Virus record (IMG/VR): IMGVR_UViG_3300025141_000016
Location: 233,105 to 297,104 of that record
DNA: 64,000 nucleotides
Strand: one strand, 5' to 3'
Under the pieces are notes generated by a model that saw nothing but the letters and a program-made list of their open reading frames with translations, was not told the origin of the DNA and did not search any database. Made by a program: the position numbers and the translations under genes. Shown piece by piece: positions 2,145-64,000 of the stretch; the first letter of the stretch is position 1, and every line of letters starts with the position of its first letter.

Positions 2145-2366
2145 CTACCGTTTGAGGAAGGCGGCGGCGACACCCCATCCCTTCGACGTGAGCCGACGGG
2201 GCTCTTTCTTGGTGATCCAGCCCTTTGTCAGTGCATGGTGGTGGTAGGGGCAAGGCCCCGAAACCGGGATGGAACCCAGAGGGTTTTTCAAGCAGTGGTC
2301 GGCCCACTTGATCATCACCTTCCGAGTCATCTGGTTGATGAACGCCTCTTCGCCTTTCGATCTCAT
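2145..2366 (-). CDS. Small hypothetical protein
   Basis: ATG at 2366 preceded by AGGAG; stop abuts the stop of the convergent gene. Confidence 0.55.
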   Translation of the reverse strand: MRSKGEEAFINQMTRKVMIKWADHCLKNPLGSIPVSGPCPYHHHALTKGWITKKEPRRLTSKGWGVAAAFLKR

Positions 2367-2416
2367 AGGTATCTCCTGCCCCACTATACCGAGGGGGTGC
2401 GCTTCATCTGTACCCC

Positions 2417-2431
2417 CGGTACTCATGCTAT
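2417..2431 (+). promoter_or_regulatory. Class I (late-type) motif, variant
   Basis: CGGTAC-tcatg-CTAT, before ATG 2461. Confidence 0.6.
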
Positions 2432-2460
2432 GGGCACACGAGAATGAGAGAGCACCGCCT

Positions 2461-3474
2461 ATGTCCGAACTTCACCTGTATGACTTCGACGGAACACTGT
2501 TCCGAAGTCCCCATGAGCCTGCGGTGTGGGATGGTCAGTGGTGGAACGACGTGCGCTCCCTGATCCCCCCGTGTGTCCCACAGAAGCCGGGGGCTGATTG
2601 GTGGGTCAACCAAACTGTCAGCAGTGCCAAGCAGTCGATCTCCGACCCAGACGTGTTTGCCATGATGATCACAGGGAGGAATGCAAACTCGGGTCTTCGG
2701 TTCCGGGTGCCAGAACTCCTCAAACAGCGAGGGCTCAACTTCGATGAGGTCCATCTGACCCCCGTTAGCAGCACCCTGGGGTACAAGAAGAAGCTGCTGG
2801 GGAATACGTTGGGGCGGTATCCCCTCATCGACACCGTGCGGATGTGGGACGACAGACCCTCACACCTCCGAGCCTTCGCGCAGGTTGCGGAGAAGATGGG
2901 GATTGACCCCGAAAACATCCATGCCACCCAGGTCCGGGCCAAGTCCAAAGACCCCGAGTGCGAAGAAGACAGCCCAGCAGGGGGTGGTTTCCTGTCAGAC
3001 CCCCCTCCAATCGGAGACGTGTGCCGATATGTAGGGGTTTTTCTTGATGCTTCTTCCAAGGCAGCCCTGTCACATGCGTTCCCTTTTGCCCACAACAAGA
3101 TCAAGAACGACCATGTGACCCTCTGCCTTGGCCCCGCTCTTGGGGGAAACATAGCGGAGGGTGCCCTCGATCTCCTGGGAACGAAGGTACGCATGAAGGT
3201 GATTGGCTACGCCGAGGATGAGGATGGGCAAGCAGTAGTGGTTTCTGTTCCCCCCGGACTCATCTCGGACGCTTCCAGAATCCCTCATGTCACCTTGTCC
3301 ATCTCGGACTCGGTGCAGTCCAAGTACAGCAACACTCTCCTCCGCAAAGGGTGGGAGCGTGTTCGCGGCCCCGCCATCAGTGGGGTGATTGATATGTTTC
3401 CGCGCTCCATGCGAAGGCAAGCAAGTGCAGTTCGGGTAGCCTTCCTGCATTCTCGCTTGGGCCGTAGCGGGTAG
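2461..3474 (+). CDS. HAD-family (Swiss-army-knife type) phosphatase fused to 2H phosphoesterase; RNA end-healing enzyme; C-terminal tag B
   Basis: YDFDGTLF..ITGR..WDDR (HAD) and two HVTL motifs (2H). Start moved to ATG 2461, 30 nt after a class I motif. Confidence 0.8.
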   Translation: MSELHLYDFDGTLFRSPHEPAVWDGQWWNDVRSLIPPCVPQKPGADWWVNQTVSSAKQSISDPDVFAMMITGRNANSGLRFRVPELLKQRGLNFDEVHLTPVSSTLGYKKKLLGNTLGRYPLIDTVRMWDDRPSHLRAFAQVAEKMGIDPENIHATQVRAKSKDPECEEDSPAGGGFLSDPPPIGDVCRYVGVFLDASSKAALSHAFPFAHNKIKNDHVTLCLGPALGGNIAEGALDLLGTKVRMKVIGYAEDEDGQAVVVSVPPGLISDASRIPHVTLSISDSVQSKYSNTLLRKGWERVRGPAISGVIDMFPRSMRRQASAVRVAFLHSRLGRSG

Positions 3475-11719: not shown

Positions 11720-12031
11720 GTGTACCGATTATGGATTGTGGACCGGGATCTGAAACCGACCGTGCTGAGTGCGGCTTACCTGACCGTCCATGAGGCGATG
11801 GGGTCGGCAGCGCGTTTGATGAAGGGGTTTGGTGCCCCGGCGTTGGATGCCAGGAACATTCTGATGTGGGCAGGGAAGCCCAGCCTTGTGGTCTTTGACC
11901 CCACCTTTTCGGTCGTTGTGTCGGCGGTCATCGAGGGAGGTCAACTGGTGTCGAGTGGTGACGATCCTGTCCCCCTTGATCCTGACGACAACGTGGGTCC
12001 ATGCCAGACGACCCCTTCAATCTCCGAGTAG
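11720..12031 (+). CDS. Hypothetical protein
   Basis: GTG start with GGAGG RBS. Confidence 0.5.
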   Translation: MYRLWIVDRDLKPTVLSAAYLTVHEAMGSAARLMKGFGAPALDARNILMWAGKPSLVVFDPTFSVVVSAVIEGGQLVSSGDDPVPLDPDDNVGPCQTTPSISE

Positions 12032-12046
12032 CGGTAGGAGCCCTAT
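12032..12046 (+). promoter_or_regulatory. Class I motif
   Basis: CGGTAG-gagcc-CTAT, before 12075. Confidence 0.75.
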
Positions 12047-12074
12047 AGGTTCCGAGGGGTCAGGAGCCCTCATC

Positions 12075-13097
12075 GTGAATCACCCGGACCCCAAACGAGT
12101 TGCTATCGCTGTGTCTCCGCAGCATCAGGCGGCTCGGGTAGCGGCTCGCTACGCCTCCTCCCCTCTGATAAAGGAGTTGGAGGAAGACTACCATTCCCTC
12201 TGGCATGACAAGCATGAAAGGGAGGACGGAAAGCCTCGGCTGTGCCCACTGAAAGCTGGGGTGCCCGATTGTGAGAAGATGACCCTCAAAGAGTTCGTTG
12301 CCAAGTGGAAGAGGCACGGGCTGAAGGCGGTAAAGGTCCAACGGCTTCCTACCACCTACTCCTACTATGACTGTGGGAGCCACGCCACGCTGCGGACGGA
12401 ACAGATCCATGGCAGCCGACTTTACCCCCAAGGCGACATCACGGTTGACTTGAACACCCCCATTCCTTGGAGCAAGGCGAAGAAAGGCGACTGGGTTCAA
12501 TGGCCATGGCACCACGGAGTGGTGATTGATCCCAAGCGCAAGATTGTGGAGAGTTGTTGGGGGGTAGACGGATGGGTGTTTCAACACCCCGTAGACCTTT
12601 CTACTTATGGGGCGAAGCCTACGGTTCATTCCGTGCATCCAAAAGAGAAGACCAAGACCGCCAGTTCTGATGGTCAGTGTATCGTCGGAGGCCAGTGCTT
12701 CCGCTACGCTGTCATGTGGGATGGCAAAGGCCCAGGATCATCCCCTGACGACATTGTTGTTCACGGGAACGTGCATGGCTTGGTCGGTCCTCACGCCTGG
12801 GTCGAGCGGAAGGACGGTCGCGTATTTGACTGGCAGACGGTTGAGGGGATCTGGGAGACGCTTGGCCGTCAACCTGACCCCAGCTACACCAAGCGCGGCT
12901 GGCCGAAGCGTGAGTTCTACGCGGAGTTCAAGCCGCGCAAGATGAAGCGGTACACCGCCGAAGACGCGCTGATCAACGGGATACGGAACCGGCACTACGG
13001 TCCCTGGGACGCGGATGAGGAGTACCGTCCTCCAATCCGATCAGCATCGCGGGTTGCCGCTCGCTACTTGATGGCTTCTCGGCGGCAACGCCGGTAG
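12075..13097 (+). CDS. Tag-B polyprotein: NlpC/P60-papain-like domain + transglutaminase-like domain
   Basis: YDC..HHGVV..ESCWG..HP..YG domain; KTAS linker; QCFRYA..HAWVE..FDWQ domain; tag B at both ends. Start GTG 12075 after AGGAG. Confidence 0.7.
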   Translation: MNHPDPKRVAIAVSPQHQAARVAARYASSPLIKELEEDYHSLWHDKHEREDGKPRLCPLKAGVPDCEKMTLKEFVAKWKRHGLKAVKVQRLPTTYSYYDCGSHATLRTEQIHGSRLYPQGDITVDLNTPIPWSKAKKGDWVQWPWHHGVVIDPKRKIVESCWGVDGWVFQHPVDLSTYGAKPTVHSVHPKEKTKTASSDGQCIVGGQCFRYAVMWDGKGPGSSPDDIVVHGNVHGLVGPHAWVERKDGRVFDWQTVEGIWETLGRQPDPSYTKRGWPKREFYAEFKPRKMKRYTAEDALINGIRNRHYGPWDADEEYRPPIRSASRVAARYLMASRRQRR

Positions 13098-33818: not shown

Positions 33819-35057
33819 ATGGCTACCCCTACTGACCGACAACTCCTCATCCGTGTGGCCTCCACTCTCCCTGTGGGGTCAGAAGCACGTCGCGTGATCC
33901 TGGCTGGGTGCGAGAAGCTGAAGGTTCCCGCGATGCGCGAGAACTGCGAGAAGTCCAAAGAGGACGGTGTTCAACCCGGTAAGGGCAAGTCGAAGTCAAA
34001 GTCGAAGGGTGACGACAAGATGCCAGCCGAGTTGCTGGAGAAGTTCAAGGCCAAGAAGAAGGCCAAGACCGCTCGGCTGATGAAGCGGCAAGAGAAGATC
34101 CTTCGCCAGTACCTCGACTCCGCATCGAGTCCAGCGATGGACTACGACGGCCTACCCCCGCAGGTTCAGAGTGCTTTGAGGCGCGTCAAGAACCAAGAAA
34201 CCCTGCACAGTGACGTGGAACGCTGGCTCGGGGACAACGCCCAACGCTCGATGTGGGCTTCCAACCGACCAGCTTTGATTCGCCTCGCTTCCAGTCTTCC
34301 TGCTGGGTCAGATGAGCGTAGGGTCATCCTCGCAAGGATCCAGAAAGAGGCCCGAGGTGGATGGGATGAGGTCATTTCCGGTGACCTCATGCGTGCTCGC
34401 TTCGGTGGTCAGAGGGTGATGATCGAGGAGATGCCGGGGAAACCCGTCAAGCGCAAGGTCCGTCGCATCACATTTTCGACGGAGTGGGTGATGCGTGGTG
34501 GGTGGTTCCGCCCCGACGGCCCTTTCCTGATGAGCAACATCTGGAATGATGCCGGTATCACCAAGAACATGACCTATGACCGAGCAGTGGCGGCGATGAG
34601 AGGGGCTATCGAGGAGGTGGGCACCAAGGCACTGAAAGAGGCAGCCAAACTCTCCAAGAAGTATCCGGGCAACTACATGACCCCTGCCGAGATGCAGGCG
34701 CAGTTGGATAAGGTCAAGTGGCCCAAAAACTTCCTCGGGAACGAGGAAGTTGTGTCGTTCTTGGAGGTCGAGCCGCAAGACTATTCCCCGATTTCTTTCA
34801 AGGGAAAGGACTTCGCGGGAACATCGAGATGGGATGAGTTCACGTTCTACGACGAGGCAGACAAGGACGACTACATGGCCCAGATGGAAGGGATGCGGGC
34901 GTTCTACAAGTCTACGTCGAAGGGTGCCGCCCGTAAGCTGTTCAAGCTGCTGAAGGCTGACCCCGACGTGGTTCGGAACATGGACAACGGGGACTTCCTG
35001 TTGTGGCTCGGCAAGAACAAGGTCAGCCACCGATACGTCCCCACCGTCTGGCGCTGA
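33819..35057 (+). CDS. Tag-A polyprotein (two tags, unknown cargo domains)
   Basis: LIRVASTLPVGSEARRVILAG and LIRLASSLPAGSDERRVILAR; KTAR and KEAR linkers. Confidence 0.75.
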   Translation: MATPTDRQLLIRVASTLPVGSEARRVILAGCEKLKVPAMRENCEKSKEDGVQPGKGKSKSKSKGDDKMPAELLEKFKAKKKAKTARLMKRQEKILRQYLDSASSPAMDYDGLPPQVQSALRRVKNQETLHSDVERWLGDNAQRSMWASNRPALIRLASSLPAGSDERRVILARIQKEARGGWDEVISGDLMRARFGGQRVMIEEMPGKPVKRKVRRITFSTEWVMRGGWFRPDGPFLMSNIWNDAGITKNMTYDRAVAAMRGAIEEVGTKALKEAAKLSKKYPGNYMTPAEMQAQLDKVKWPKNFLGNEEVVSFLEVEPQDYSPISFKGKDFAGTSRWDEFTFYDEADKDDYMAQMEGMRAFYKSTSKGAARKLFKLLKADPDVVRNMDNGDFLLWLGKNKVSHRYVPTVWR

Positions 35058-41819: not shown

Positions 41820-42244
41820 TGACCTACCGTTATTCGTGAAGCGAGGGAGAGGAGCGGTCGCTCCCCCATGAACATCCCCATCCTCCGGGCTTTGACGAGG
41901 AAGACATTGTGGTTGACGAAGAACTGAAAAAGGAAGCCTCCCAAGATCGCCGGATCCTCATCCGTCTCGCCTCCACTCTCCCTGCGGGAGATGGGATGCG
42001 CCGAGCCATCCTGGCTGGGCTCCGACGGAGAGCCGCCAAGGAACCTTGGAAGCACTGGGGGAAGACGCAAAAGGAGATGCTTGGGATAGCCAAGGCCGAG
42101 ATGAAGCGGCTCAATGTCAGGAGCCCAGATGATCTCCGCAAGGCGCGAAAGAAGCATAAGCCCAGTCTCCCGTCCGATGGGTCCAGCGGTCAATATGACG
42201 CTTGGACCGAAACGCTCGCACAGGTCTTGGAGATGGAGGAATGA
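41819..42244 (+). pseudogene. Tag-A gene interrupted by an in-frame TGA at codon 7 (or starting at GTG 41909)
   Basis: TGATG-coupled ATG 41819 is in frame with ORF 41909..42244; single TGA at 41837-41839. Confidence 0.5.
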
Positions 42245-46679: not shown

Positions 46680-47000
46680 ATGACTGAACCTACTCGCCGG
46701 ATGCTGATCCGATTTGCGTCCACCCTTCCTGTGGGATCAGACGAACGTCGGACCATCCTCGCTGGACTGGACAAGCAGGGTTCCGTGGAGTCCTTTGAGA
46801 AGGAACTCGCCATACAGTTACGTTTGCATACGGGCTTGGGTCCAAAGGATCAGATGGGCCTGAAGGGTCGCACCGTGTGGCTTGCCGATGGAAAGGGTGA
46901 GGTACTGATCTACGATACGACTGCCCGTGGGACGGTGCTCAACTACAAGGGCAAGGAATACAAGTCGGTAAGGGACTTGATGAAGTCCCTTTCTCGGTAG
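46680..47000 (+). CDS. Small tag-A protein
   Basis: LIRFASTLPVGSDERRTILAGL, then KQGS. Confidence 0.75.
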   Translation: MTEPTRRMLIRFASTLPVGSDERRTILAGLDKQGSVESFEKELAIQLRLHTGLGPKDQMGLKGRTVWLADGKGEVLIYDTTARGTVLNYKGKEYKSVRDLMKSLSR

Positions 47001-52719: not shown

Positions 52720-54150
52720 ATGCCTACCTTCACCTCTGATGATCGCAAGATTCTGGTCCGGTACGCCTCGACGCTGCCCTCCGGGTCGCCGGAGCGGAAG
52801 GCTGTTTTGGCGGGTCTTTCCCTGACTGGTTCCGGTTCCGGTGCTGCAAACGCGAAGTATCTGGACAGCCTGCCCTCTGGCACGAAGGCCAAGATTCTGA
52901 AGAACGTGGCCAAGCATTATGGTGTCTCCGTCTCCGAGATCGAGGACGAACTGACAGATCGGGATGCAGAAGCCCTGTATGAGTACATCGCAAACGACAA
53001 TGCCTTGCGGATGCAGGTTTACCGCGACTTCAAGCAGCAGCGGTTGGCTGCAAGCAAGAACGCTGCCGGATACGCCCGTAAGTCCATGCGTGGGGGAGAC
53101 TACGGAGGGGCTGGGAGCAGCAAGCAGTTGGTGAAGGACATGATTGCCAACATGCGACGGGTGAAGACCAACGCTGAACGAAGCCATGCCGTTGAGCAGG
53201 TGCAGCACGCGGAAGCTGCGAAGTCCATCACCTCCCAACAGGCCAAAGAGGTCATGGGAGCCATTGGTAAGACCGCATCGGCCCGTACCGCCGAGGACTG
53301 GATGGAAGACGCGGTGAAGCGCCCTGGTCGCCTTCACAAGTTCTTCGGTATCCCCGAGGACGAGACGATCCCCATGTCGAAGATCGACGGTGAGATCGCC
53401 AAGTTGAAGAAGAAAGACGACCGCACGAAGGACGAGGAGTCCCTGCTCGATGCCCTCAACCTGGGCAAGACCTTCAAGGAAATGAAGAAGTCGGCTGCGG
53501 GAGAGGAACACTACATCGGGGACGAGGAAGCGGGGGTGTACTGGAGCGTCGATGAAACCCCTCGCGGATGGTTCGTCCAGGCTTGGGTGGATGGTGGTCA
53601 CTTCACACATGACTTCCCGAAGGATGGTCCTTACCCCACCGAAGGGGAAGCCATGGAAGCTGGATGGTCACAAGGGCTTGAATGGGTGGTGACCAACGAT
53701 GTGAGCCTTGCGGGCGAACCCAAGACCTTCCCCGCCTGGGCTCGCAGGAACAGATGGCAGCCTCGCACAGCCTCCTCCGATGATCGCATCGCTCTCATCC
53801 GCTACGCCTCTACCCTTCCTGTGGGGTCAGATGAGCGCAAAGCCATCCTGTCGGGGTTGAAGACTGCTGCCCTTGATTCCGTGTCTCTCGGTGAGATGAT
53901 GGTGTCGGCGGCAGCCCAGGCTCGGCTGTTCTATCGCCTTGACATGAAGCGGTTTGTGGGTGTGTACGAGGAAGTGGGTCAGAATCTTATCCGAATCGGG
54001 CATACCTCTGACCCCGATGACCGTGCGTTCCTTGTCAGCGAGGTCGATAAGGGGCTGGCCGATTTGAAGAAGCACAACATCACCGCTATGTCGGAGGCGT
54101 TGGAGCACATGACCCGTGCCTACGCACTCGTTTCCAAAGCGTATCGCTGA
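52720..54150 (+). CDS. Tag-A polyprotein with about five small modules
   Basis: Two tag-A copies; RLAA, KTAS-ARTA, KSAA, RTAS, KTAA linkers. Confidence 0.75.
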   Translation: MPTFTSDDRKILVRYASTLPSGSPERKAVLAGLSLTGSGSGAANAKYLDSLPSGTKAKILKNVAKHYGVSVSEIEDELTDRDAEALYEYIANDNALRMQVYRDFKQQRLAASKNAAGYARKSMRGGDYGGAGSSKQLVKDMIANMRRVKTNAERSHAVEQVQHAEAAKSITSQQAKEVMGAIGKTASARTAEDWMEDAVKRPGRLHKFFGIPEDETIPMSKIDGEIAKLKKKDDRTKDEESLLDALNLGKTFKEMKKSAAGEEHYIGDEEAGVYWSVDETPRGWFVQAWVDGGHFTHDFPKDGPYPTEGEAMEAGWSQGLEWVVTNDVSLAGEPKTFPAWARRNRWQPRTASSDDRIALIRYASTLPVGSDERKAILSGLKTAALDSVSLGEMMVSAAAQARLFYRLDMKRFVGVYEEVGQNLIRIGHTSDPDDRAFLVSEVDKGLADLKKHNITAMSEALEHMTRAYALVSKAYR

Positions 54151-55403
54151 TGGCTCGACGTACTGCCAAGGCTGATGTGACCCCGGTTCGACAGCGGACC
54201 CAGTACACCTGCATGAGCACCTCCCTGATGATGTGCCTCCAGGCCCTTGGGTACGACGTTGACGAGGATGAGGTCAACAAGGTCATGGGCGCACGTCCCA
54301 TGAAGGGTGCAGCGTGGGAGCAGGCTCTTGCCGCTGCCCAGCACTTCGGAGTCCGAGGAACACTCGTGACCCCTTCGACTGTGCGGCAGTTGAAGGAATG
54401 GACCGACGCGGGCAAGCCCGTGATGATCGCCTGGAATCCCGAGGGTCGAGAGTGGTCACACGCCAGCGTCGTCTTCGACGTGACCCCGTGCAAGGAACAT
54501 GGGTTCGACGTTCATGTCGCTGACCCCAACATCCCTGACCCCGACGAGACAGTCCGGGTCATGCCCAAGTCCGAGTTCTACAAGAAGTGGTACGAGAAGT
54601 GGCCGAACTACTTGGTTCGCCGTCCCGCTCTCATGCTGGACCGGGAGATCACTCCTGATGGTCGTCAGGTGATGGCCTTCAAGAAAGCATCCTCTCGTGG
54701 CTGGGAGAAAACCATCGCTTCTTGGAGCAAGGAGTACAAGACCCCAGAGGGGAAGGTTTTAGGGACCGTGGTTATCGACCGGGGCAAGGTCAACTGGAGG
54801 CCGAACCAGTTGATTGAGGGTTTCGTTCGTCCGCAGGTCATCAGTCGTTCCCGAAGTGGGGAAGAAATCCCCAGTAACGAGAAACTGACCTCTGTGGCAG
54901 ATGCCTGGGTGCGGAAGAACCATGGGAGACAAGTCATGGCTTCCGGTTCCGCTGACCCCAGCCGGGTGGCGGCCAGATATGCCTCGCGCTGTGCCAGTGG
55001 GGATAAAGCCCTCTGGGCGGGTCGGCGCAAGCCCACTTCCGGGGAAGTGGAATGGGCGAAGAATGCCAAGTGGCAGGATTGGGAGCCGCACCCACTCCCC
55101 GATGACCTCACCAAGTTTTTCAAGCGCACCCCAGATACGATTGAGGTGGGTCTTTCCGAGATCACCCCAATCCGGGCTCGGGAGAAAGGCATCGCTAACG
55201 CCAACCGATTCATGTGGTTGGCGTACTGGGGGAAGATGCCCCGGCGAAAGCCCATTTCGTTGAGAGAAAACGATGACGGCACCTACACCATCCTTGATGG
55301 GAACTCGACCTATGCCAACGCCAAGATGAGTGGGTGGAGACACATGTGGGGTCGAGTTGAAGAGTCCCCCTCTACAACGCGGCTATCGCGGAGGATCCCA
55401 TGA
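54150..55403 (+). CDS. Tag-B polyprotein: C39-like peptidase + unknown + ParB/Srx-like domain
   Basis: RQRTQYTC..SHASVV..VADP; KPI..YTILDGNSTY..GW; ADPSRVAARY. Confidence 0.72.
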   Translation: MARRTAKADVTPVRQRTQYTCMSTSLMMCLQALGYDVDEDEVNKVMGARPMKGAAWEQALAAAQHFGVRGTLVTPSTVRQLKEWTDAGKPVMIAWNPEGREWSHASVVFDVTPCKEHGFDVHVADPNIPDPDETVRVMPKSEFYKKWYEKWPNYLVRRPALMLDREITPDGRQVMAFKKASSRGWEKTIASWSKEYKTPEGKVLGTVVIDRGKVNWRPNQLIEGFVRPQVISRSRSGEEIPSNEKLTSVADAWVRKNHGRQVMASGSADPSRVAARYASRCASGDKALWAGRRKPTSGEVEWAKNAKWQDWEPHPLPDDLTKFFKRTPDTIEVGLSEITPIRAREKGIANANRFMWLAYWGKMPRRKPISLRENDDGTYTILDGNSTYANAKMSGWRHMWGRVEESPSTTRLSRRIP

Positions 55404-57566: not shown

Positions 57567-58256
57567 ATGGGAGCGAAGATGCGCCAGAGCAGGGCCGACC
57601 GTGAGTATATCCTTGGCGCTCTCCCCTCTGGGGTTCGGCGGGTTCAGGTTATCGACGGGTCGGGAAAGCAGGTTTACAAGCGGCCTGATGACGTGGACCT
57701 CATGGCTGATGAGATCGTCCTTTCCAATGACGGCTCCCCCATCGTCATGCGAGGCAAGCCAGGACGGAAGCCCAAGTCACAGTTGGTTCCTGTGAGCCCA
57801 CAGGTTGCGGAAGTGAGCAAGGCTCGGGGCGAACACATCGACCATGACCTCCTGCGTCGTGAGGCCGAGAAAGACGCGGAAGGCGATGGGGTCATCAACC
57901 GTTTGATCCTGGCGATGGCCGAGGAAGCGGCTGCCATCGAGTTTGAGCGAGAGGAAGCTGGTCGTCATGGCCAGGACACCACGAACCACTCCGCGAAAAG
58001 GGCTCGTATCCTCAAAGGGATGGCAGACACTTGGTTGAAGCGCAAGCAAACCATGGAAGGGGGTATTGTCGATCTGGACAGCCCTGCTTTCCAGGGCTTG
58101 TTCTCCTTCATCTTGGAGACATTCAAGGAAGCGATGACCGAGGTTGGCTCGCGTCCCGAGTTCGTTGAGACAGTTTTTACGAAGTTGGTCGTTGTGCTGG
58201 CAGATGATCCCTGGAAACAGGAGGCCAAGGCCCGGATGCGGGATAAACTCCGGTGA
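57567..58256 (+). CDS. Hypothetical helical protein
   Basis: ORF in the late operon. Confidence 0.65.
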   Translation: MGAKMRQSRADREYILGALPSGVRRVQVIDGSGKQVYKRPDDVDLMADEIVLSNDGSPIVMRGKPGRKPKSQLVPVSPQVAEVSKARGEHIDHDLLRREAEKDAEGDGVINRLILAMAEEAAAIEFEREEAGRHGQDTTNHSAKRARILKGMADTWLKRKQTMEGGIVDLDSPAFQGLFSFILETFKEAMTEVGSRPEFVETVFTKLVVVLADDPWKQEAKARMRDKLR

Positions 58257-58264
58257 GGTGAACG

Positions 58265-59671
58265 GTGCCAACCAATGTAGTCAAGACACCAGCCGATGAG
58301 AAGAAGTGGGAGAAGGCCAAGGCCCGTGCGAAAGAGCAGGGGAAGGCCGAGAACTATGCCTACATCATGGGCATCTACAAGCAGATGAACCCCGAGAGGT
58401 TCAAGTCAGCCCAGCGGGTCACCGCCCGGTTTCGCGATGAGGACTATGTAGACCTGCTCCAGAGGAAAATCTCCCTAAAGGAGTTCCTCAAAAAGCACCC
58501 CAAGATCAAAGCAGTTGACACCCAACGACTCGATGCCCTGCCGGAAAGCGGATTGTCCAGAGGGTACGACTACGATTGCTTTGTCCATGCAGAACTGCGA
58601 GCCGTCCAGTTGAGCGAAGCCAAATCCTACCGAGAGGTAGACTGGGAACCCATCGGACTCGACGGTGCCGGGGCCAACCCACCCAGAGGAGCCGGGATCC
58701 CGTGGAGTGAGGCCAAGAAAGGGGACTGGGTTCGGTGGCCCGGACTCGGAGGCCATCACGGCGTGGTCATTGACCCCAACCGGAAGATTGTAGAGAGTTG
58801 TTGGGGCTACAAAGGCACCGTGTTCCAGCACCCGGTTGACTACCATCCCTACGGAGGCGGTGGTGAGGTTTTCCCCGTGCGCCCCAAAGTATCAGCCCAG
58901 CGGGTCGCCGCCAGATACGCAGCACAGCTTCCTTTGATGGACCCCCTCTACAACCTGCGGGAAGCCGCCAAGGAACTGCTCTTGCTGGAGGACCATCTGG
59001 GTCATGCCCAGAAGCACTGTCCTGACTGCATCCGTAAACATCTGCTCACCACGGAGGCACTGCTTGAAGAAGCAGTGCGCCTCGACACAGAAGGGGAGAT
59101 GTTGGGGTTGCTCTCACCGCTTCCGGCACAGGTACGGGAACTGTGGACAGCCTATCAAGATGGTCGCCCGGAGCATGAGATCGGGCAAGCCGCCCGTGTT
59201 TTGCGTAAGGGACTCGTAGAGGCTTCCGCCGATGTTCGTGTGGCTGCCCAGGCTGCAAAGCAGGGGAAGTATGCCTACATCATGGGGATCTACAAGGGCA
59301 TGAACCCCAAGGCTTCTGCTTCTAAGGTTGCTGTACGGTACTTGACGGCTCGGATGTCTTCAAAGATACGAAGAGCCATAGCGAAGTGGTACAAGAAAGA
59401 GAAATACACTTCGGAGCTTTATCCTGGATCCTACAAGCACAAGTGGAACAAGGAAAACCACCCGGATGTCTTGGAGAAGCGATTCAACAAGATGTATCGG
59501 GGTTTCGGAGGGGACCAGAGAGAACACTTCGCAACCAAGGTGTTGGACTACTACGAACACCCAAGCTGGGCTCGGGGGTACGAAATCTTGGCGCAAGCGT
59601 GGGAAGATACGGATCGCTACTTCAACGAACCGGTGGAAGATCCAGACCCTTACGACGAGGAGGACTACTAA
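58265..59671 (+). CDS. Tag-B polyprotein including an NlpC/P60-papain-like domain
   Basis: Three tag-B copies, duplicated YAYIMGIYKxMNP, domain paralogous to 12075..13097. Confidence 0.75.
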   Translation: MPTNVVKTPADEKKWEKAKARAKEQGKAENYAYIMGIYKQMNPERFKSAQRVTARFRDEDYVDLLQRKISLKEFLKKHPKIKAVDTQRLDALPESGLSRGYDYDCFVHAELRAVQLSEAKSYREVDWEPIGLDGAGANPPRGAGIPWSEAKKGDWVRWPGLGGHHGVVIDPNRKIVESCWGYKGTVFQHPVDYHPYGGGGEVFPVRPKVSAQRVAARYAAQLPLMDPLYNLREAAKELLLLEDHLGHAQKHCPDCIRKHLLTTEALLEEAVRLDTEGEMLGLLSPLPAQVRELWTAYQDGRPEHEIGQAARVLRKGLVEASADVRVAAQAAKQGKYAYIMGIYKGMNPKASASKVAVRYLTARMSSKIRRAIAKWYKKEKYTSELYPGSYKHKWNKENHPDVLEKRFNKMYRGFGGDQREHFATKVLDYYEHPSWARGYEILAQAWEDTDRYFNEPVEDPDPYDEEDY

Positions 59672-60033
59672 TGGCTGCAACCCCCTATGCCTACAACGCC
59701 TATGTCGTATCGGTTTACGATGGTGACACCATCACCGTCATTCTCGATATGGGAATGGGGGTGCAGAAGAAAGCCAAATGTCGAATGTACGGCATCGACA
59801 CCCCGGAAATCCGTGGCAAGACGGTTCGAGAAAAGACCGCAGCCAAAGTCGCCAGGGATCGCTTGCGAGAGCTCGTCAACGAGAAGACGGTACTCATCCA
59901 GTCCCTTACCAAGCCCGACAAGTACGGAAGGCTGCTGGTAAAAGTGTGGATCGATGACACCTACATCAACGACCTTCTAATCGAAGAAGGGTTGGCGAGA
60001 GCCTACGATGGTGGAAAGAAGAGTCCTTGGTAG
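59671..60033 (+). CDS. Thermonuclease (SNase-like)
   Basis: VYDGDTI, RMYGIDTPE, DKYGRLL, EGLA; TAATG-coupled start. Confidence 0.9.
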   Translation: MAATPYAYNAYVVSVYDGDTITVILDMGMGVQKKAKCRMYGIDTPEIRGKTVREKTAAKVARDRLRELVNEKTVLIQSLTKPDKYGRLLVKVWIDDTYINDLLIEEGLARAYDGGKKSPW

Positions 60034-60326
60034 ACCCTAATGGATACCTGGAACTCGAATCCAAAAGCGCGGATGTGCAACCAGTGCAACCCACAATCCT
60101 TCGGGAATAGTCGCGCCGCGACCAAGTGCGATTAAGACGGACAAGTAAGTAAACGCCTCATCTTCATCGAGCCTGAGGTTCCGTTTTTCCATCCATGTTT
60201 GAGCGGTAGAATCCATGAGAAGGCAAGCCCCTCCCATAAATCTAACACAAAACCCCCCTGTTTGCGAAACAGTTTCCTGTTCGCACAAACTAAGGGGCAA
60301 AGTTTCCCCCAAAAGGGGCAAAAGTT

Positions 60327-60509
60327 TTAGCTGTTTCGGGCTTCCAAAACACCTTTCCGTACACCGTCCATCGACTTCTTGATGGTCATGGCGACTTTAC
60401 GGATACGTGTGCCGGGAGCTCCGGCCATACCCTTGTCCACCTTTTCGGCATCGGCCTTCAATGCTTGAAGGGCTTCGATGGCAGCCTCGATTTGTTCTGA
60501 AACATTCAT
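60327..60509 (-). CDS. Histone H1/Hc1-like small nucleoid protein
   Basis: DAEK..KG..A.GTRIRK pattern; GGAGGAG RBS; class II motif upstream. Confidence 0.6.
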   Translation of the reverse strand: MNVSEQIEAAIEALQALKADAEKVDKGMAGAPGTRIRKVAMTIKKSMDGVRKGVLEARNS

Positions 60510-60550
60510 GTCTATTCTCCTCCCCAATGGGGTTTGGTTATGGTTGATAA

Positions 60551-60577
60551 TACCGAACGATGAAGCATAGGAACCCC
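60551..60577 (-). promoter_or_regulatory. Class II motif
   Basis: GGGGT-N17-CGGTA, before 60509. Confidence 0.65.
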
Positions 60578-60871
60578 CTATGCTTCCCCAATGGCTTCTT
60601 CGTTAAGAACACACCCGATAAAGGTGTCCAACAATTCTCGGAGTCGAACCATCTCGGTCAAGGGCATCCGTCGGAGATCATGCACCGTATTTTCGGGCAA
60701 GACCAAGAAGTGAACCCCAGCTTCATCTGCGTTTTCTTCCAGGACATGTTGAAGAAATGCACGTCGCTCATCGGAAAGTCCTTCACACACCTCAACAAGC
60801 ACCAAATCTCCTTCCTGAACCTTGACAGGAAGAATGTTGGATACCTCATTGACTCGTGTGGGTGGGCTCAT
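60578..60871 (-). CDS. Hypothetical protein
   Basis: ATGA-coupled to the actin-like gene. Confidence 0.6.
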   Translation of the reverse strand: MSPPTRVNEVSNILPVKVQEGDLVLVEVCEGLSDERRAFLQHVLEENADEAGVHFLVLPENTVHDLRRMPLTEMVRLRELLDTFIGCVLNEEAIGEA

Positions 60872-61872
60872 TCTTCGTACTCTTGAACAGCTTGAATGAG
60901 CAATCCTTGAGCAACCGCGTTCAATGGATCACCCGCTTGACGGATTTCTGAGATCTCAAATGGGAACTTCCGCTTCTTCTTAGCGAAGACCTTCTCAAAG
61001 AACGGTAGGAAGTTTCCAGCCATCGAAGTGCCGCCACTCACAATAATCGGGATTGGTTTGGGGAGGGCGAAACGATCCTTGATCTTGATGAATTCCTTGG
61101 CCACCTGATCAATACAGTATTCAACCAAGCTCTTGTAATAGAGCACCAGTGCTTCTTCTTCCCGATTCTGAGGGTCTATAAGGTCAATGCCTTTTTCCTT
61201 CGTAGCGCACATGCGGCTCTTTGTTGAACCCATTGCTTTAGCAGCCCCAGCATCGATCCAATCCCCACCCCGAGCCACCGAAAAGGACATACCTTCCACT
61301 CCGGAAACACTCAGGGCGATGTTGCACATACCCGAACCGAAGCTGATACCCAGACCGGAAAAGCCTTCGGCGGCTGTTTCTGAATAGATGATGGCCATCG
61401 CTTCGTTGGAAGGGTAAGCCTCATAGCCGCACTCTTCTACAATTCGTTCGAAGACCCCTTGATGGTAAACCACATCCCGATCCGCATCCACAGGAGCGGC
61501 AGGCACGCTGAAGAAGCAAATCTCGTTCGCTTCTGCCGGTTCCCCCAAAACATTCTTTACCAGGACACCAAGTACGGAAAGAGCATCCATCTCGCCGGCT
61601 GCCACCAAACCTTGTGACAGGGGGCGGCGCGCTTCACGACCGAACACATTCGCCATTTCCATAGCGGCATCGCCTACGACGATGATTCCATCATCGCCAT
61701 GGTCAATGAACTGAACCCCGCTAAGCTTCAGCATCTTTTTCGCTCCGGAGTCCAAATCCAGAAAAGCATCCCGAATACGGGAAGTTTCGACTTTGGTTCC
61801 CTTACGGCGCGCCGAAACCAAATTCATAGTTCCGACATCCAAACCTACACCTAATGTCTTTTTACCAGCCAT
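60868..61872 (-). CDS. Actin-like ATPase (MreB/MamK superfamily)
   Basis: GLDVGT (phosphate 1), NEAMA, SFGSG (phosphate 2), IIVSGGTS (adenosine), PLNAVAQG. Confidence 0.85.
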   Translation of the reverse strand: MAGKKTLGVGLDVGTMNLVSARRKGTKVETSRIRDAFLDLDSGAKKMLKLSGVQFIDHGDDGIIVVGDAAMEMANVFGREARRPLSQGLVAAGEMDALSVLGVLVKNVLGEPAEANEICFFSVPAAPVDADRDVVYHQGVFERIVEECGYEAYPSNEAMAIIYSETAAEGFSGLGISFGSGMCNIALSVSGVEGMSFSVARGGDWIDAGAAKAMGSTKSRMCATKEKGIDLIDPQNREEEALVLYYKSLVEYCIDQVAKEFIKIKDRFALPKPIPIIVSGGTSMAGNFLPFFEKVFAKKKRKFPFEISEIRQAGDPLNAVAQGLLIQAVQEYEE

Positions 61873-61882
61873 ATTGACACCC

Positions 61883-62521
61883 CTATTTCTTGGAAGACTT
61901 GCGCAACGCCTTCAAAGCTTTGGCCGCTTCATCCAAGCCTCCCGAAGAAGAAGTGGAGGAATTGATGTCCAATTCCGAAGCGTCGTCTTGAACAATACCC
62001 GTAGGAATAAAGACAGGTTCTTCCGGTCCTGCTGAAGCAAAATTGGTTCCCCCCATCCCTTGTGAAGACAATGCGGCTGCGACTGCTCGCTGAATCTTCG
62101 TTTCCAAGTCCTCCTGGGGTGCTGCGGGTGCGACTTGTTGAAGCACTTGTTGAACAACCGTGTCTGCGACCAAGGCGGCCGCCTTGGTCGCAGCTTGTGC
62201 AGCCAAGGCTTCTGCTTCTTGCGGTGACATACCACCAGCTTGGGGCTTTGGTGCCGCTTGGTTGTTGCCGAAGGGCTTTTGCATCCCTCCTTTGTTGGGG
62301 CGGCTCAAACGACCAGCCCGATAGGGAACTCTGGGGGGATCTTTAGACATGGCACACCTCTTTCCAGTTGAAACCTTCAGCTTCCCGATACGAACCAACT
62401 GTGCAAGGCACATAGATTTGCGTGCTACATCCATTTCCACCCAAGTAGGGGTGCCTGGGATAACTCTAATTTTCAGGTCTTCGATGAAGATGGGTTCGGT
62501 TGATTCAATTCTCGTTTTCAT
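61883..62521 (-). CDS. Hypothetical protein
   Basis: Coupled ORF with a low-complexity middle. Confidence 0.65.
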   Translation of the reverse strand: MKTRIESTEPIFIEDLKIRVIPGTPTWVEMDVARKSMCLAQLVRIGKLKVSTGKRCAMSKDPPRVPYRAGRLSRPNKGGMQKPFGNNQAAPKPQAGGMSPQEAEALAAQAATKAAALVADTVVQQVLQQVAPAAPQEDLETKIQRAVAAALSSQGMGGTNFASAGPEEPVFIPTGIVQDDASELDINSSTSSSGGLDEAAKALKALRKSSKK

Positions 62522-63060
62522 AAAGGACTGGTCTCCTTCAGCATCGGCAAAACAATCTCATTACGAATGATTGCGGCTGCGTTCTCACGCCCTCTTTTCA
62601 CCCCTTTAGAGAGGAAGTTGTACTTCGCAAACCCTGGGTGGATCCACGCATCTTCCGTTTGAAGGGGGGCTGTACGGAGAATGGTTTCCCCGGAAGAAGT
62701 GATGATCGGAACTATTTTTACCTTGGGCTGTTTCAACCAGGTCATTTCGTAGGGGGCTTTCCCTTCCTCAAAAGCCTTTGCGAAAGGCCAGTCGGTTTCA
62801 ATTTCCACCGTTCGTGCCCCTCGAATTTTGAACTGAAAGGACTCTATAAATTCCGGGGAAACGGGCAAAGACCTGGGACTCCCCCGACCTTTCATAGAAG
62901 CGGCAAGGGCGATTGACCGACGAATCTCGTATCGGACACCTTCCAATACGGCAACACCGAGCTTTTGCATTATCGCAGGGGTAATCTCTATCTTCTTGCC
63001 CGCTAACTTAGACCAAGGAGTTGCATACACCCCGCGCACTCGAACATATTCATCACCCAT
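62518..63060 (-). CDS. Probable neck/tail-completion-type protein
   Basis: FEEGKAPYEM..RTAP..WIHPG..FL pattern; context. Confidence 0.5.
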   Translation of the reverse strand: MGDEYVRVRGVYATPWSKLAGKKIEITPAIMQKLGVAVLEGVRYEIRRSIALAASMKGRGSPRSLPVSPEFIESFQFKIRGARTVEIETDWPFAKAFEEGKAPYEMTWLKQPKVKIVPIITSSGETILRTAPLQTEDAWIHPGFAKYNFLSKGVKRGRENAAAIIRNEIVLPMLKETSPL

Positions 63061-63400
63061 AGATCACCTCTATCGCAAACTTGATCAGGGTGACTGTGAT
63101 GCCTGTAATAGACAACCCAAGTCCTATGTTGGCTCTCGTTTGTGCTTGATCTGCCCGTTCCCCAGCAGCTTTGGCCTTTTCGAAAGCTTCCCCCAGGTTG
63201 TCCCTTTTGATCTTGTAATCAAAGTGGTCCATCGAGTGCATACCAGGAATCCGTTCAAAGAAATCCCCACACTCCCGCTCTTCCCAGACATCGGTATCTA
63301 TCAACCGAATCTGATACCAGATGCACACCCCTGCGTACTTCTTTTCATGGTGCCCATCCGGATACTGGTTCCACAACCCACAACGCCCACATCTCGCCAT
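63053..63400 (-). CDS. Small Cys-rich protein with C-terminal TM helix
   Basis: Start ATG 63400 (TAATG overlap); CGRC..C..C; hydrophobic end. Confidence 0.6.
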   Translation of the reverse strand: MARCGRCGLWNQYPDGHHEKKYAGVCIWYQIRLIDTDVWEERECGDFFERIPGMHSMDHFDYKIKRDNLGEAFEKAKAAGERADQAQTRANIGLGLSITGITVTLIKFAIEVIYG

Positions 63401-63999
63401 TAGCCGCTCCCCGTTCCGGGACCCTTCCCTCCGTACATGATGTTGGCCCATACCGGAGTGCGACCCCGCTGTTCCCTTCCTTCCGGAATCTTAGGAACTT
63501 CGGTGCCCATAGGGGTGGCCTGGTAATCAAAGCCTACGGGATGTGGGTCTGACTCCACACAAGGGGAATCTTCCGGGCGCGTATAACGGGTCTCGGGCCA
63601 CGCCAAGCTTTCCAGGTTGCCCAAAGGAACCTGATACCGAATGTCCTGTGAATCCAAGTAGCCGATTTGGAAGGCTTGTTGGAGTGTCACCCCTCGCACT
63701 CCCGTTCTACGAACCGGGCCAATGGAATACCGTTCCCCATTCTGCTTCACAATGAAGTCTCGTTGGCTGAGCATAGGGCTGGGACTGGTCCACACTTCAT
63801 AGGTGTGCTCCAACCTCCGGCCGTTAACCGTCTGGGCAACCCTGCGTTCTGCATCATCCGGACCAACGATCAAGTCAATCGGACCCTCGTAGCCCCCAAG
63901 GAAACCAGTACCGAAACAAGACACACACTGGTTCACAGGCTGCTTGGTGTAGGTCAACAACCGTTCATCCCAAGAACAGTTGCACACCGTTCCCGTTAC
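63400..63999 (-). CDS. Probable head-closure/neck protein, 5'-truncated
   Basis: Frame open to the window end; CNC..CVSCFGTGF.GGY..P..SQRDFIV..RY pattern. Confidence 0.55.
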   Translation of the reverse strand, partial: VTGTVCNCSWDERLLTYTKQPVNQCVSCFGTGFLGGYEGPIDLIVGPDDAERRVAQTVNGRRLEHTYEVWTSPSPMLSQRDFIVKQNGERYSIGPVRRTGVRGVTLQQAFQIGYLDSQDIRYQVPLGNLESLAWPETRYTRPEDSPCVESDPHPVGFDYQATPMGTEVPKIPEGREQRGRTPVWANIMYGGKGPGTGSG

Positions 64000-64000
64000 T

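What the first reader, a model, noticed from the sequence alone, without database searches (positions are those of the whole stretch)
60868..61872. Phage-encoded actin-like ATPase within a neck/structural operon
All five actin-fold motifs are present, with Ser replacing the usual phosphate-2 Asp. Nucleus-forming jumbo phages use the tubulin PhuZ; an actin homologue co-transcribed with morphogenesis genes could position DNA or capsids in an analogous way (inference).
Basis: partly seen in the sequence, partly recalled or inferred. Interest (0 to 1): 0.6.

Follow-up and report, generated by a model that had tools for sequence, protein, structure and literature searches.

The report
Huge-phage actin with its own adaptor
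The gene is a real, very highly conserved actin homologue of uncultured huge phages, always found beside a small protein predicted to clamp onto it, which suggests these phages build their own actin tracks inside bacteria; the piece of DNA carrying it was wrongly joined to another phage's genome.

Summary
The ORF at 60868-61872 (-) is real. It is a full-length member of Pfam Volactin (PF25216, E 1.7e-76), and all five actin-fold motifs are present. The phosphate-2 Ser is real but not special: 143 of the 150 nearest family representatives have it.

The gene belongs to a conserved phage-only module: P699, an optional Zn-ribbon protein, gpA, gpB, then the actin. The module occurs in about 20 distinct huge-phage contigs and in the published 485-kb phage LR745208.1. 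Cellular Volactins lack these partners.

The actin is 53-95% identical across phages whose gpA and gpB are only 18-40% identical. gpB has a small N-terminal domain, a disordered linker and a C-terminal amphipathic helix. That helix is predicted to dock on the actin (ipSAE 0.78; best control 0.00).

"Neck/structural operon" has only moderate support. gpA resembles tail-completion folds at TM 0.47-0.65, and P699 hits "virion structural protein" weakly.

Important caveat: window 59246-64000 is a chimeric tail. The main genome closes as a 292,248-bp circle at 59245, so the actin lies on a fragment of a related, lower-GC phage.

No paper found describes this clade. I rate it a new variant of a known kind.

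The parts
60868..61872 (-). Actin homologue (334 aa), Volactin family. Phosphate-1 motif D12-N17 lies at 61822-61839; phosphate-2 motif S177-N184 lies at 61321-61344.
   Evidence: ORF; PF25216 E 1.7e-76; invariant motifs; nearest solved sequence is MamK 5jyg, E 0.03.
61883..62521 (-). gpB (212 aa), the predicted adaptor. It has an N-terminal beta-beta-beta-beta-alpha-alpha-beta domain (residues 1-55), a low-complexity linker, a helical hairpin (100-154), an invariant PVFIPxGIV motif (about 61991-62017) and a C-terminal amphipathic helix with a basic tail (residues 196-212, about 61886-61936).
   Evidence: Alignment A2; AF2 model with N-domain pLDDT 95-97; predicted docking on the actin with ipSAE 0.78 against 0.00 for controls; always directly upstream of the actin or within 2 kb of it.
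62518..63060 (-). gpA (180 aa), a conserved partner with an invariant W-x-H-P-G motif and a possible tail-completion/neck-like fold.
   Evidence: Alignment A1; AF2 pLDDT 76.5; atlas TM 0.47-0.65 to PF05069, PF11114 and PF04883 clusters; VIA Z 5.8 to 9mu2_P; no sequence-family hit.
63053..63451 (-). Small Cys-rich (CxxC) protein found only in the closer relatives. The true start is probably the internal Met before 'ARCGRCG'.
   Evidence: Iterative HMM search, 12 hits; the paralogue in phage A starts at that motif.
63400..64000 (-). C-terminal 199 aa of a P699-family protein, cut by the contig end. This is the conserved first gene of the module.
   Evidence: 97% identical to the L006 702-aa protein; family A4 is conserved in 19 phages; weak phrog_2806 and phrog_1004 hits; viral clusters only in the atlas.
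60578..60871 (-). 97-aa ORF overlapping the actin stop by 4 nt; found only in the closest relative.
60327..60527 (-). Hc1-type histone H1-like DNA-binding protein (66 aa).
   Evidence: PF07432 at 36.2 bits against a cut-off of 23.5, E 5.5e-9; a homologue also lies about 3.4 kb downstream of phage A's actin.
60037..60321 (-). 94-aa ORF, the last gene of the minus-strand run; convergent with the SNase gene 3 nt away.
59671..60033 (+). Staphylococcal-nuclease-like gene, convergent with the actin operon. It is part of the phage-B fragment, and continuous homology to L006 starts here.
   Evidence: PF00565 E 1.1e-14; blastn against L006.
59145..59245 (.). 101-nt stretch identical to the first 101 nt of the contig. 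The branch point where phage A closes into a circle, and where the foreign tail (59246-64000) was attached, is at 59245/59246.
   Evidence: Exact repeat, and the loose-end consensus equals G000 102 onward; depth drop and GC3 shift.

Best explanation
The gene encodes a phage actin of the Volactin family that most likely polymerises into dynamic, ATP-driven filaments in the infected cell. It works with the product of the gene just upstream, gpB, which acts as a tether. gpB's C-terminal amphipathic helix and its PVFIPxGIV motif clamp onto the actin. Judging from the residue numbers and the usual actin topology, this is at the hinge groove between subdomains IA and IIA. gpB's long flexible linker and small N-terminal domain would hold a cargo. 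Because the module always follows P699 (weakly 'virion structural') and gpA (tail-completion-like fold), the cargo is most likely a virion assembly intermediate, with phage DNA as the alternative. The system would position or move that cargo in the cell. Shown: family membership, motifs, extreme conservation, conserved synteny, and restriction of the partners to phages. Predicted in silico: gpB-actin binding. Inferred: filament formation, the identity of the docking groove, the cargo and the purpose.
For: The match to PF25216 is full-length, and no other actin family appears at E <= 0.1. The founding member, volactin, forms dynamically unstable filaments in vivo (PMC10869688). The ATP-binding motifs are invariant. 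Across phages, actin identity to the window copy is 53-86%, while gpA in the same loci is 21-82% and gpB 18-84%, mostly 20-40%. Between phage A and the window fragment the figures are actin 81%, gpA 33% and gpB 36%. The order P699-(Zn ribbon)-gpA-gpB-actin holds in every locus with upstream DNA and in LR745208.1, but not at three cellular Volactin loci. Complex prediction: median ipSAE 0.78, best of 3 controls 0.00. The tool reports that 58 of 80 solved complexes and 2 of 110 mismatched pairs reach this mark. Runs agree in at least 79% of contacts and partner pLDDT is at least 66. gpB residues 196-204, including the near-invariant A199 and the invariant L203, touch actin 163-171 and 325-330. 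Inteins with homing endonucleases sit just after the phosphate-2 motif in several members, as is typical of indispensable conserved sites. Genes overlap or abut.
Against: There is no experiment on any member of this clade. The complex score is a model's confidence, my own alignments were used, and ParM-ParR or actin-WH2 complexes may be remembered by the model. The fold matches for gpA (TM about 0.5, Z 5.8), for the gpB N-domain (Foldseek E 0.45-0.58 to lambda gpFI-C and YqbF; Z 3.7) and for P699 are all weak. The Ser at the phosphate-2 position could mean slow or altered hydrolysis. The recognisable capsid-like gene of phage A (weak PF05065 hit at 23.5 kb) lies about 100 kb from its actin module, so the module is not in the main head-gene block. 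No expression data were obtained.
Confidence: 0.55

Rival explanations
1. It is a ParMRC/AlpAC-type DNA-positioning system. gpB would bind phage DNA through its N-terminal domain or basic tail, and the actin filaments would push or anchor replicating genomes or an extrachromosomal prophage.
For: gpB has the ParR-like layout of a folded N-domain, a disordered linker and a C-terminal helix predicted to bind the actin. The adaptor-then-actin gene order resembles alpA-alpC of prophage CGP3 (PMC4446434). An Hc1-type DNA-binding protein lies next to the module in both phages. Salactin, another haloarchaeal actin, aids DNA partitioning (PMC10869688).
Against: No iteron or centromere-like repeat array lies near either module, and there is almost no intergenic space. 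The gpB N-domain is not a ribbon-helix-helix: it is modelled as four strands, two helices and a strand, and its best fold neighbours are small phage proteins, YqbF and gpFI-C. The module is invariably linked to P699 and gpA, which a partition system would not need. No ParM/StbA family hit was found.
Confidence: 0.2
2. It is a host-takeover factor. The phage actin, with gpB as a membrane tether through its amphipathic basic helix, would remodel cell shape or block division to enlarge the virus factory, without carrying any phage cargo.
For: Volactin controls cell shape in Haloferax, and its filaments are anchored to the membrane by their tips (PMC10869688). The gpB C-terminus (amphipathic helix followed by Lys/Arg) looks like a membrane-targeting sequence.
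Against: The same helix is confidently predicted to sit on the actin, not to be free. Linkage to P699 and gpA is unexplained. The host is unknown.
Confidence: 0.1
3. It is a non-polymerising ASKHA ATPase, chaperone- or kinase-like, acting in virion assembly. The phosphate-2 Ser would mark a change of chemistry.
For: The canonical phosphate-2 Asp is replaced. The neighbours may be structural.
Against: Only Volactin is hit; no Hsp70, sugar-kinase or FtsA families appear at E <= 0.1. The Ser is family-wide, and the family's founding member is reported to polymerise, although I did not check that protein's own residue. Conservation of 53-95% over the whole length fits a polymer with many interfaces.
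Confidence: 0.1

Closest known systems
Volactin (HVO_2015, Haloferax volcanii; Pfam PF25216)
   Same: Same Pfam family, matched over its full length at 258 bits. Same length class. The founding member forms dynamically unstable, ParM-like filaments (PMC10869688).
   Different: This one is encoded by huge phages, forms a tightly conserved viral branch, and always carries the phage-only partners P699, gpA and gpB. Cellular members checked are only about 42-43% identical and sit in unrelated contexts. Identity to HVO_2015 itself was not measured because I had no sequence for it.
AlpC/AlpA of Corynebacterium glutamicum prophage CGP3
   Same: A phage-encoded actin with a co-transcribed upstream adaptor that binds the filament (PMC4446434). 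The gene order of adaptor then actin is the same here.
   Different: AlpA binds a DNA consensus in its own promoter and the pair are early genes needed for replication. Here no repeats or promoter space exist, the partners look morphogenesis-like, and the actin belongs to a different family. AlpC homology was not tested.
ParMRC type II plasmid partition
   Same: An actin-like motor plus an adaptor whose C-terminal helix is predicted to bind the actin.
   Different: There is no parC-like array. The adaptor N-domain is not ribbon-helix-helix-like. The adaptor lies upstream rather than downstream. No ParM family hit was found.
PhuZ tubulin spindle of nucleus-forming jumbo phages
   Same: A phage-encoded cytomotive filament in very large phages. 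PhuZ positions the phage nucleus and delivers capsids (PMC7950403; abstract of PMC9891218), which is the kind of role proposed here.
   Different: The fold is different (actin, not tubulin). No tubulin gene occurs in the complete companion genome. There is no evidence for a phage nucleus.
MamK (5jyg), the nearest solved structure by sequence
   Same: Aligned over residues 67-217, including connect 1 and phosphate 2.
   Different: The match is only E 0.03. MamK keeps the phosphate-2 Asp. It works in a magnetosome context.

Membership tests
Volactin family (PF25216), actin/ASKHA fold | Full-length match above the curated cut-off | tested here: met
   258.2 bits against 35, residues 9-328 on profile 3-321 of 321; the same holds for relatives.
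Volactin family (PF25216), actin/ASKHA fold | Five nucleotide-binding and hinge motifs (phosphate 1, connect 1, phosphate 2, adenosine, connect 2) | tested here: met
   All are invariant in 22 phages and conserved in 150 representatives. Phosphate 2 carries Ser instead of Asp, as in 143 of 150 representatives.
Volactin family (PF25216), actin/ASKHA fold | Four-subdomain actin fold by structure comparison | not tested
   Both fold jobs went to gpA and gpB. The actin chain was folded only inside the complex job (pLDDT 88), without a fold search.
Volactin family (PF25216), actin/ASKHA fold | ATP-dependent polymerisation and hydrolysis | not testable with these tools
   Needs purified protein.
ParMRC type II partition system | Motor belongs to the ParM/StbA family | tested here: not met
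   Only PF25216 is reported at E <= 0.1.
ParMRC type II partition system | Adaptor whose C-terminal helix binds the actin | tested here: met
   In silico only: ipSAE 0.78 against a best control of 0.00.
ParMRC type II partition system | Adjacent centromere of direct repeats (parC) | tested here: not met
   No repeat array lies near either module; only short two-copy matches and coding low-complexity repeats were found.
ParMRC type II partition system | Ribbon-helix-helix DNA-binding N-domain in the adaptor | tested here: not met
   The model is beta-beta-beta-beta-alpha-alpha-beta at pLDDT 95-97. Its neighbours are YqbF, gpFI-C and small phage proteins.
AlpAC-type phage actin system | Adaptor gene directly upstream and co-oriented with the actin | tested here: met
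   The gpB stop lies 10 nt before the actin start, and the arrangement is conserved in all loci.
AlpAC-type phage actin system | Adaptor binds phage DNA | not testable with these tools
   Needs EMSA or ChIP.
PhuZ-type phage tubulin | Tubulin/FtsZ fold | tested here: not met
   The protein is actin-fold. PF00091 is absent from the 297-kb record.
Tail-completion/neck proteins (PF05069, PF11114, PF04883), for gpA | Sequence match to the family models | tested here: not met
   No Pfam or PHROG hit for gpA or its paralogue. A profile search against PDB sequences found nothing below E 1.
Tail-completion/neck proteins (PF05069, PF11114, PF04883), for gpA | Shared fold | tested here: inconclusive
   Atlas TM 0.51/0.62, 0.47/0.65 and 0.51/0.53 over 110-125 residues. 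VIA Z 5.8, rmsd 4.4, 101 aligned to SaPI1 neck chain 9mu2_P, tied with unrelated rows. Foldseek PDB gave nothing.

The most novel reading that the evidence does not exclude
A widespread clade of uncultured huge phages runs an actin-based assembly line. Dynamic Volactin-type filaments would be coupled through the gpB adaptor to virion parts (the P699/gpA side of the module), ferrying or positioning capsids or tails inside large host cells. This would be an actin counterpart of the PhuZ tubulin system, evolved independently and with its own dedicated actin-binding protein.
Probability: 0.25. Interest if true: 0.8.

Novelty: new variant of a known kind. Interest (0 to 1): 0.55.

Why it matters
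Phage-built cytoskeletons are so far known mainly from PhuZ tubulin in nucleus-forming jumbo phages, and from a few ParM/Alp-type actins on prophages and plasmids. Here an actin from a different family (Volactin) is one of the most conserved genes of a clade of huge, uncultured, largely marine phages of roughly 200-485 kb. It comes with a dedicated, phage-only partner set that includes a predicted actin-binding adaptor. If the filaments and the adaptor are real, this gives a second, independent example of viruses organising the bacterial cytoplasm. It would also provide a compact actin-plus-binding-peptide pair that can be tested in vitro without culturing the phage. The work also corrects a public record: the IMG/VR contig is a complete 292-kb circle with a foreign 4.8-kb tail, not a 67%-complete linear fragment with two actin modules.

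Tried and rejected
1. Two actin modules in one genome. An all-against-all comparison first suggested a diverged inverted duplication. I rejected this. The second module sits on a tail with foreign GC3 and 3-4-fold lower depth in two samples. The main genome closes on itself at window 59245. Five related records have one copy each.

2. Simple chimera with L006. I first argued against a chimera because L006 shares the actin-Hc1-SNase junction. That only shows the tail is internally sound, not that it belongs to the 292-kb genome.

3. The Ser as a phage-specific oddity. Rejected. My first motif table was offset by three residues and was discarded.

4. parC-like repeats: none found.

5. Promoter and terminator scan: fewer sites than in shuffled sequence, so uninformative.

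6. Sequence families for the partners. Searches for gpA, gpB, P699, the Zn-ribbon protein, the 97-aa ORF and the conserved flanking genes of distant phages gave nothing useful.

7. Atlas searches for P699 returned viral clusters without names. The structural rows to sheath and T4 gp13 were only TM 0.25-0.33.

8. Hallmark genes near the module. No sheath or terminase was found by Pfam, and only a sub-threshold capsid hit 100 kb away.

9. Literature. Hits for 'actin' in huge-phage papers were 'actinophages' or reference lists.

10. The capsid-binding idea for the gpB N-domain (lambda gpFI-C, YqbF) stays a lead only: E 0.45-0.58 and Z 3.7.

11. Not done: no phylogeny against MreB, ParM and MamK was built, because no tool-supplied sequences of those families were at hand and I did not type any from memory.

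Full report
**The observation.** A 334-aa ORF lies at 60868-61872 on the minus strand, exactly as reported. It matches Pfam PF25216 (Volactin) from end to end at 258 bits against a curated cut-off of 35 (E 1.7e-76). No other actin-type family appears at E <= 0.1. PHROGs has no family for it. By sequence alone it has no close solved relative. A profile of 22 phage homologues finds MamK (5jyg) at E 0.03.

**The motifs.** The five actin-fold motifs are all present and invariant among the phage homologues:
- phosphate 1: D12-x-G14-T15-M16-N17
- connect 1: N156-E157-A158
- phosphate 2: S177-F-G179-S-G181-M182-x-N184
- adenosine: S279-G280-G281-T282
- connect 2: around P316-G323

It is not a peculiarity of this gene, though. 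Among the 150 best representatives of the exhaustive search, 143 carry Ser at that position and 2 carry Asp (one search was mis-registered and is void). I could not check the residue in Haloferax volcactin's founding protein, HVO_2015, itself.

**What the DNA is.** The window is the last 64 kb of IMG/VR record Ga0209756_1000003 (297,104 bp, listed as linear and 67% complete). The end of this record is not what it seems.
- The genes from about 60.0 kb onward have GC3 of 0.46-0.59, against 0.66-0.75 elsewhere.
- From the SNase gene at 59669 to the end, the DNA is 81-91% identical to an independent 193-kb contig (L006) that has GC 0.53 throughout. To the left of that point nothing matches.
- I laid Logan contigs of four marine runs on 58000-62000 (4,001 letters, within the operators' limit). 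In X1, the likely source sample, the left side has depth 32 and the right side 8.7-11.2. In X2, an independent sample, the figures are 10.5 and 2-4.
- In X2, a 3,023-nt contig at the main depth matches 58883-59245 exactly and then runs into different sequence.
- That different sequence is position 102 onward of the same record, and the record's first 101 nt equal window 59145-59245.
- Closing the record there gives a 292,248-bp circle with an open frame across the junction.

So window 1-59245 belongs to a complete circular phage, which I call phage A. Window 59246-64000, including the finding, is a fragment of a related, lower-GC and less abundant phage (phage B), or of a minority recombinant. 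It was attached at a shared stretch.

Phage A has its own actin module at 121.8-132.8 kb. That region also has an Hc1-like gene and an SNase downstream, so the two modules are orthologous neighbourhoods in two phages, not paralogues in one. Five related records have one copy each. The actin tree places the two copies in separate phage lineages.

**The module.** On the fragment the minus-strand genes run as follows:
- P699 fragment: 63400-64000
- Cys-rich small protein: 63053-63451
- gpA: 62518-63060
- gpB: 61883-62521
- actin: 60868-61872
- 97-aa ORF: 60578-60871
- Hc1-like protein: 60327-60527 (PF07432, 36 bits)
- 94-aa ORF: 60037-60321

The gaps between them are -8, -4, +10, -4, +50 and +5 nt, and the run ends 3 nt from a convergent SNase gene. 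An iterative HMM search over all ORFs of 34 loci shows the order P699, optional Cys-rich protein, gpA, gpB, actin in every locus with enough upstream DNA. That covers roughly 20 distinct phages on contigs of up to 350 kb. A few have a 1-2 kb insert before the actin. The published 485-kb uncultured phage LR745208.1 has the same four genes.

**Distribution.**
- Among 50,697 GenBank phage records, only that one and a 595-kb one (31% identity) have a homologue. Both are uncultured metagenomic assemblies; no cultured phage record has one.
- Among one genome each of 185,579 prokaryote species, the pattern scan found a single hit, on a MAG contig that carries the same module.
- The wider family is large: 1,080 representatives at E <= 0.001 and 340 at E <= 1e-30.
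- The family includes cellular members at about 42-43% identity. One is in a bacterial chromosome among glycosyltransferases, one is a tandem pair beside porins, and one is in a gas-vesicle cluster of a Minisyncoccales MAG. None of these has P699, gpA or gpB.

**Conservation.** Identity of the actin to the window copy is 53-86% across the aligned phages, with a mean column identity of 70%. In the same loci, gpA is 21-82% and gpB 18-84%, mostly 20-40%. The word search returned 120 top hits, all at least 72% identical. Several members, one of them 61% identical to the query, carry an intein with an HNH or LAGLIDADG endonuclease just after the phosphate-2 motif. Both features point to a protein under very strong constraint. 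That is expected for a polymer with several interfaces, but this is an inference.

**The partners.**
- *gpB.* It has a well-conserved N-terminal domain of about 55 residues (pLDDT 95-97; four strands, two helices, one strand). This is followed by a variable low-complexity linker, a helical hairpin, an invariant PVFIPxGIV motif, and a C-terminal amphipathic helix ending in Lys/Arg.
- *gpB and the actin.* A complex prediction of the actin with gpB 160-212 gave a median ipSAE of 0.78, against 0.00 for the best of three controls. The tool reports that 58 of 80 solved complexes and 2 of 110 mismatched pairs reach this mark. Runs agree in at least 79% of contacts and partner pLDDT is at least 66. 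The counts hold only roughly because my own alignments were used. The helix (196-204, with the near-invariant A199 and the invariant L203) touches actin 163-171 and 325-330, and the PVFIP motif touches 143-148. From the canonical topology these segments line the cleft between subdomains IA and IIA, where ParR binds ParM. That mapping is my inference, and a pass may partly reflect the model's memory of such complexes.
- *gpB N-domain.* Its best fold neighbours are lambda gpFI C-domain (E 0.45), YqbF (E 0.58; Z 3.7) and many small uncharacterised phage proteins (best E 1.1e-3; two at TM 0.75). This is suggestive of a recurrent phage domain, but not significant.
- *gpA.* The model (pLDDT 76.5) has no Foldseek match. 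Its VIA best scores are Z 6.4 and 5.8, the latter to a SaPI1 neck chain. In the atlas it scores TM 0.47-0.65 to clusters carrying Phage_tail_S, Minor_capsid_2 and HK97-gp10-like. That is three related neck/tail-completion families, so the support is moderate rather than conclusive.
- *P699.* It is a virus-only family with weak PHROG hits to two unnamed families and to 'virion structural protein' (3 of 19 members, best E 9e-5). One member has an intein.
- *Other checks.* No centromere-like repeats lie near either module, and the promoter/terminator scan is uninformative. Phage A has no tubulin. Its only capsid-like hit is sub-threshold and 100 kb from its module.

**Interpretation.** The best-supported reading is a phage actin filament system with gpB as a dedicated adaptor that tethers a cargo. 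The cargo is probably a virion assembly intermediate, given the neighbours, and otherwise phage DNA (confidence 0.55). There are three rivals:
- An AlpAC/ParMRC-like DNA-positioning system (0.2). It is weakened by the absence of repeats and by the non-RHH adaptor domain.
- Host-shape takeover with gpB as a membrane tether (0.1).
- A non-polymerising ATPase (0.1).

**Novelty.** Phage-encoded actins are known, for example AlpC with AlpA (PMC4446434), and volactin itself is described (PMC10869688). I found no paper describing this huge-phage clade or its partners. The 2020 huge-phage paper mentions PhuZ but not actin. Recent reviews and surveys of jumbo phages do not mention an actin homologue. 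The library is incomplete, so this is absence in what could be searched. I rate it a new variant of a known kind, with interest 0.55.

- Read laying was given 4,001 letters.
- No other genetic code was used.
- The exhaustive protein search was used once, because the claim that the phage branch lacks close cellular relatives, and the judgement on the Ser, rest on the wider family.

Noticed in passing
window 59145-59245 and 59246-64000; G000 1-101: The IMG/VR record is a complete 292,248-bp circular genome with a 101-nt end overlap, plus a 4,755-nt tail from a related lower-GC phage. Its 'linear, 67% complete' label and its apparent second actin module are assembly artefacts.
   Followed up: yes
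P0128, P0131, P0135, P0137 (family representatives): Inteins with HNH or LAGLIDADG homing endonucleases are inserted in the actin just after the phosphate-2 motif (about residue 187-206). Many representatives of about 700 aa show the same split match.
   Followed up: partly
L043:7001-8044: A Volactin-family gene of a Minisyncoccales (candidate phyla radiation) MAG sits inside a gas-vesicle gene cluster (GvpA, F/L, G, K, O, AAA ATPases). This hints at an actin linked to gas vesicles.
   Followed up: no
L042:5903-8374: Two Volactin paralogues lie in tandem in a Gram-negative-type bacterial chromosome, next to porin genes. Other cellular members carry N-terminal extensions of 150-580 aa.
   Followed up: no
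window 33819-35057, 41909-42244, 46680-47000, 52720-54150 and at least 9 other genes of phage A: A motif of about 30-35 aa (consensus like 'T-x-x-D-R-x-x-L-I-R-L-A-S-x-x-P-x-G-S') starts at least 13 otherwise unrelated proteins and recurs internally in some. It could be a shared targeting or packaging signal, or a processing site.
   Followed up: partly
L031:1198-3813: One P699 homologue (871 aa) carries an intein (Intein_splicing, Hint, LAGLIDADG), which again marks P699 as a conserved, important phage protein. P699 also has a conserved CxC...CxxCxGxG zinc-ribbon-like motif.
   Followed up: no
L039:5830-8847 (G000 124830-127847): In phage A, a 1005-aa protein with a strong PHROG match to 'ParB C-terminal domain' (phrog_2579, E 4e-30) lies between P699 and the rest of the actin module.
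   Followed up: no
window 58265-59671 and 11886-13097: The gene at the chimeric junction contains a twice-repeated 'KxxNYAYIMGIYK' motif and has a paralogue in the window. About 850 nt of it appear identical in phages A and B (depth rises from 32 to 42-51 at 58363-59226), which is what misled the assembler.
   Followed up: partly
window 222-2144, 2269-3474, 54150-55403: Phage A encodes an ART-PolyVal ADP-ribosyltransferase domain protein, a 'Swiss Army Knife' RNA-repair HAD domain protein, and a C39-like peptidase fused to a further domain.
   Followed up: no
window 60327-60527; G000 136193-136606 and 199431-199913: Hc1-type (chlamydial histone H1-like) proteins are encoded by both phages, with three copies on the record. 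This may hint at DNA compaction or at a host from the Planctomycetes-Verrucomicrobia-Chlamydiae group. The host was not determined.
   Followed up: no
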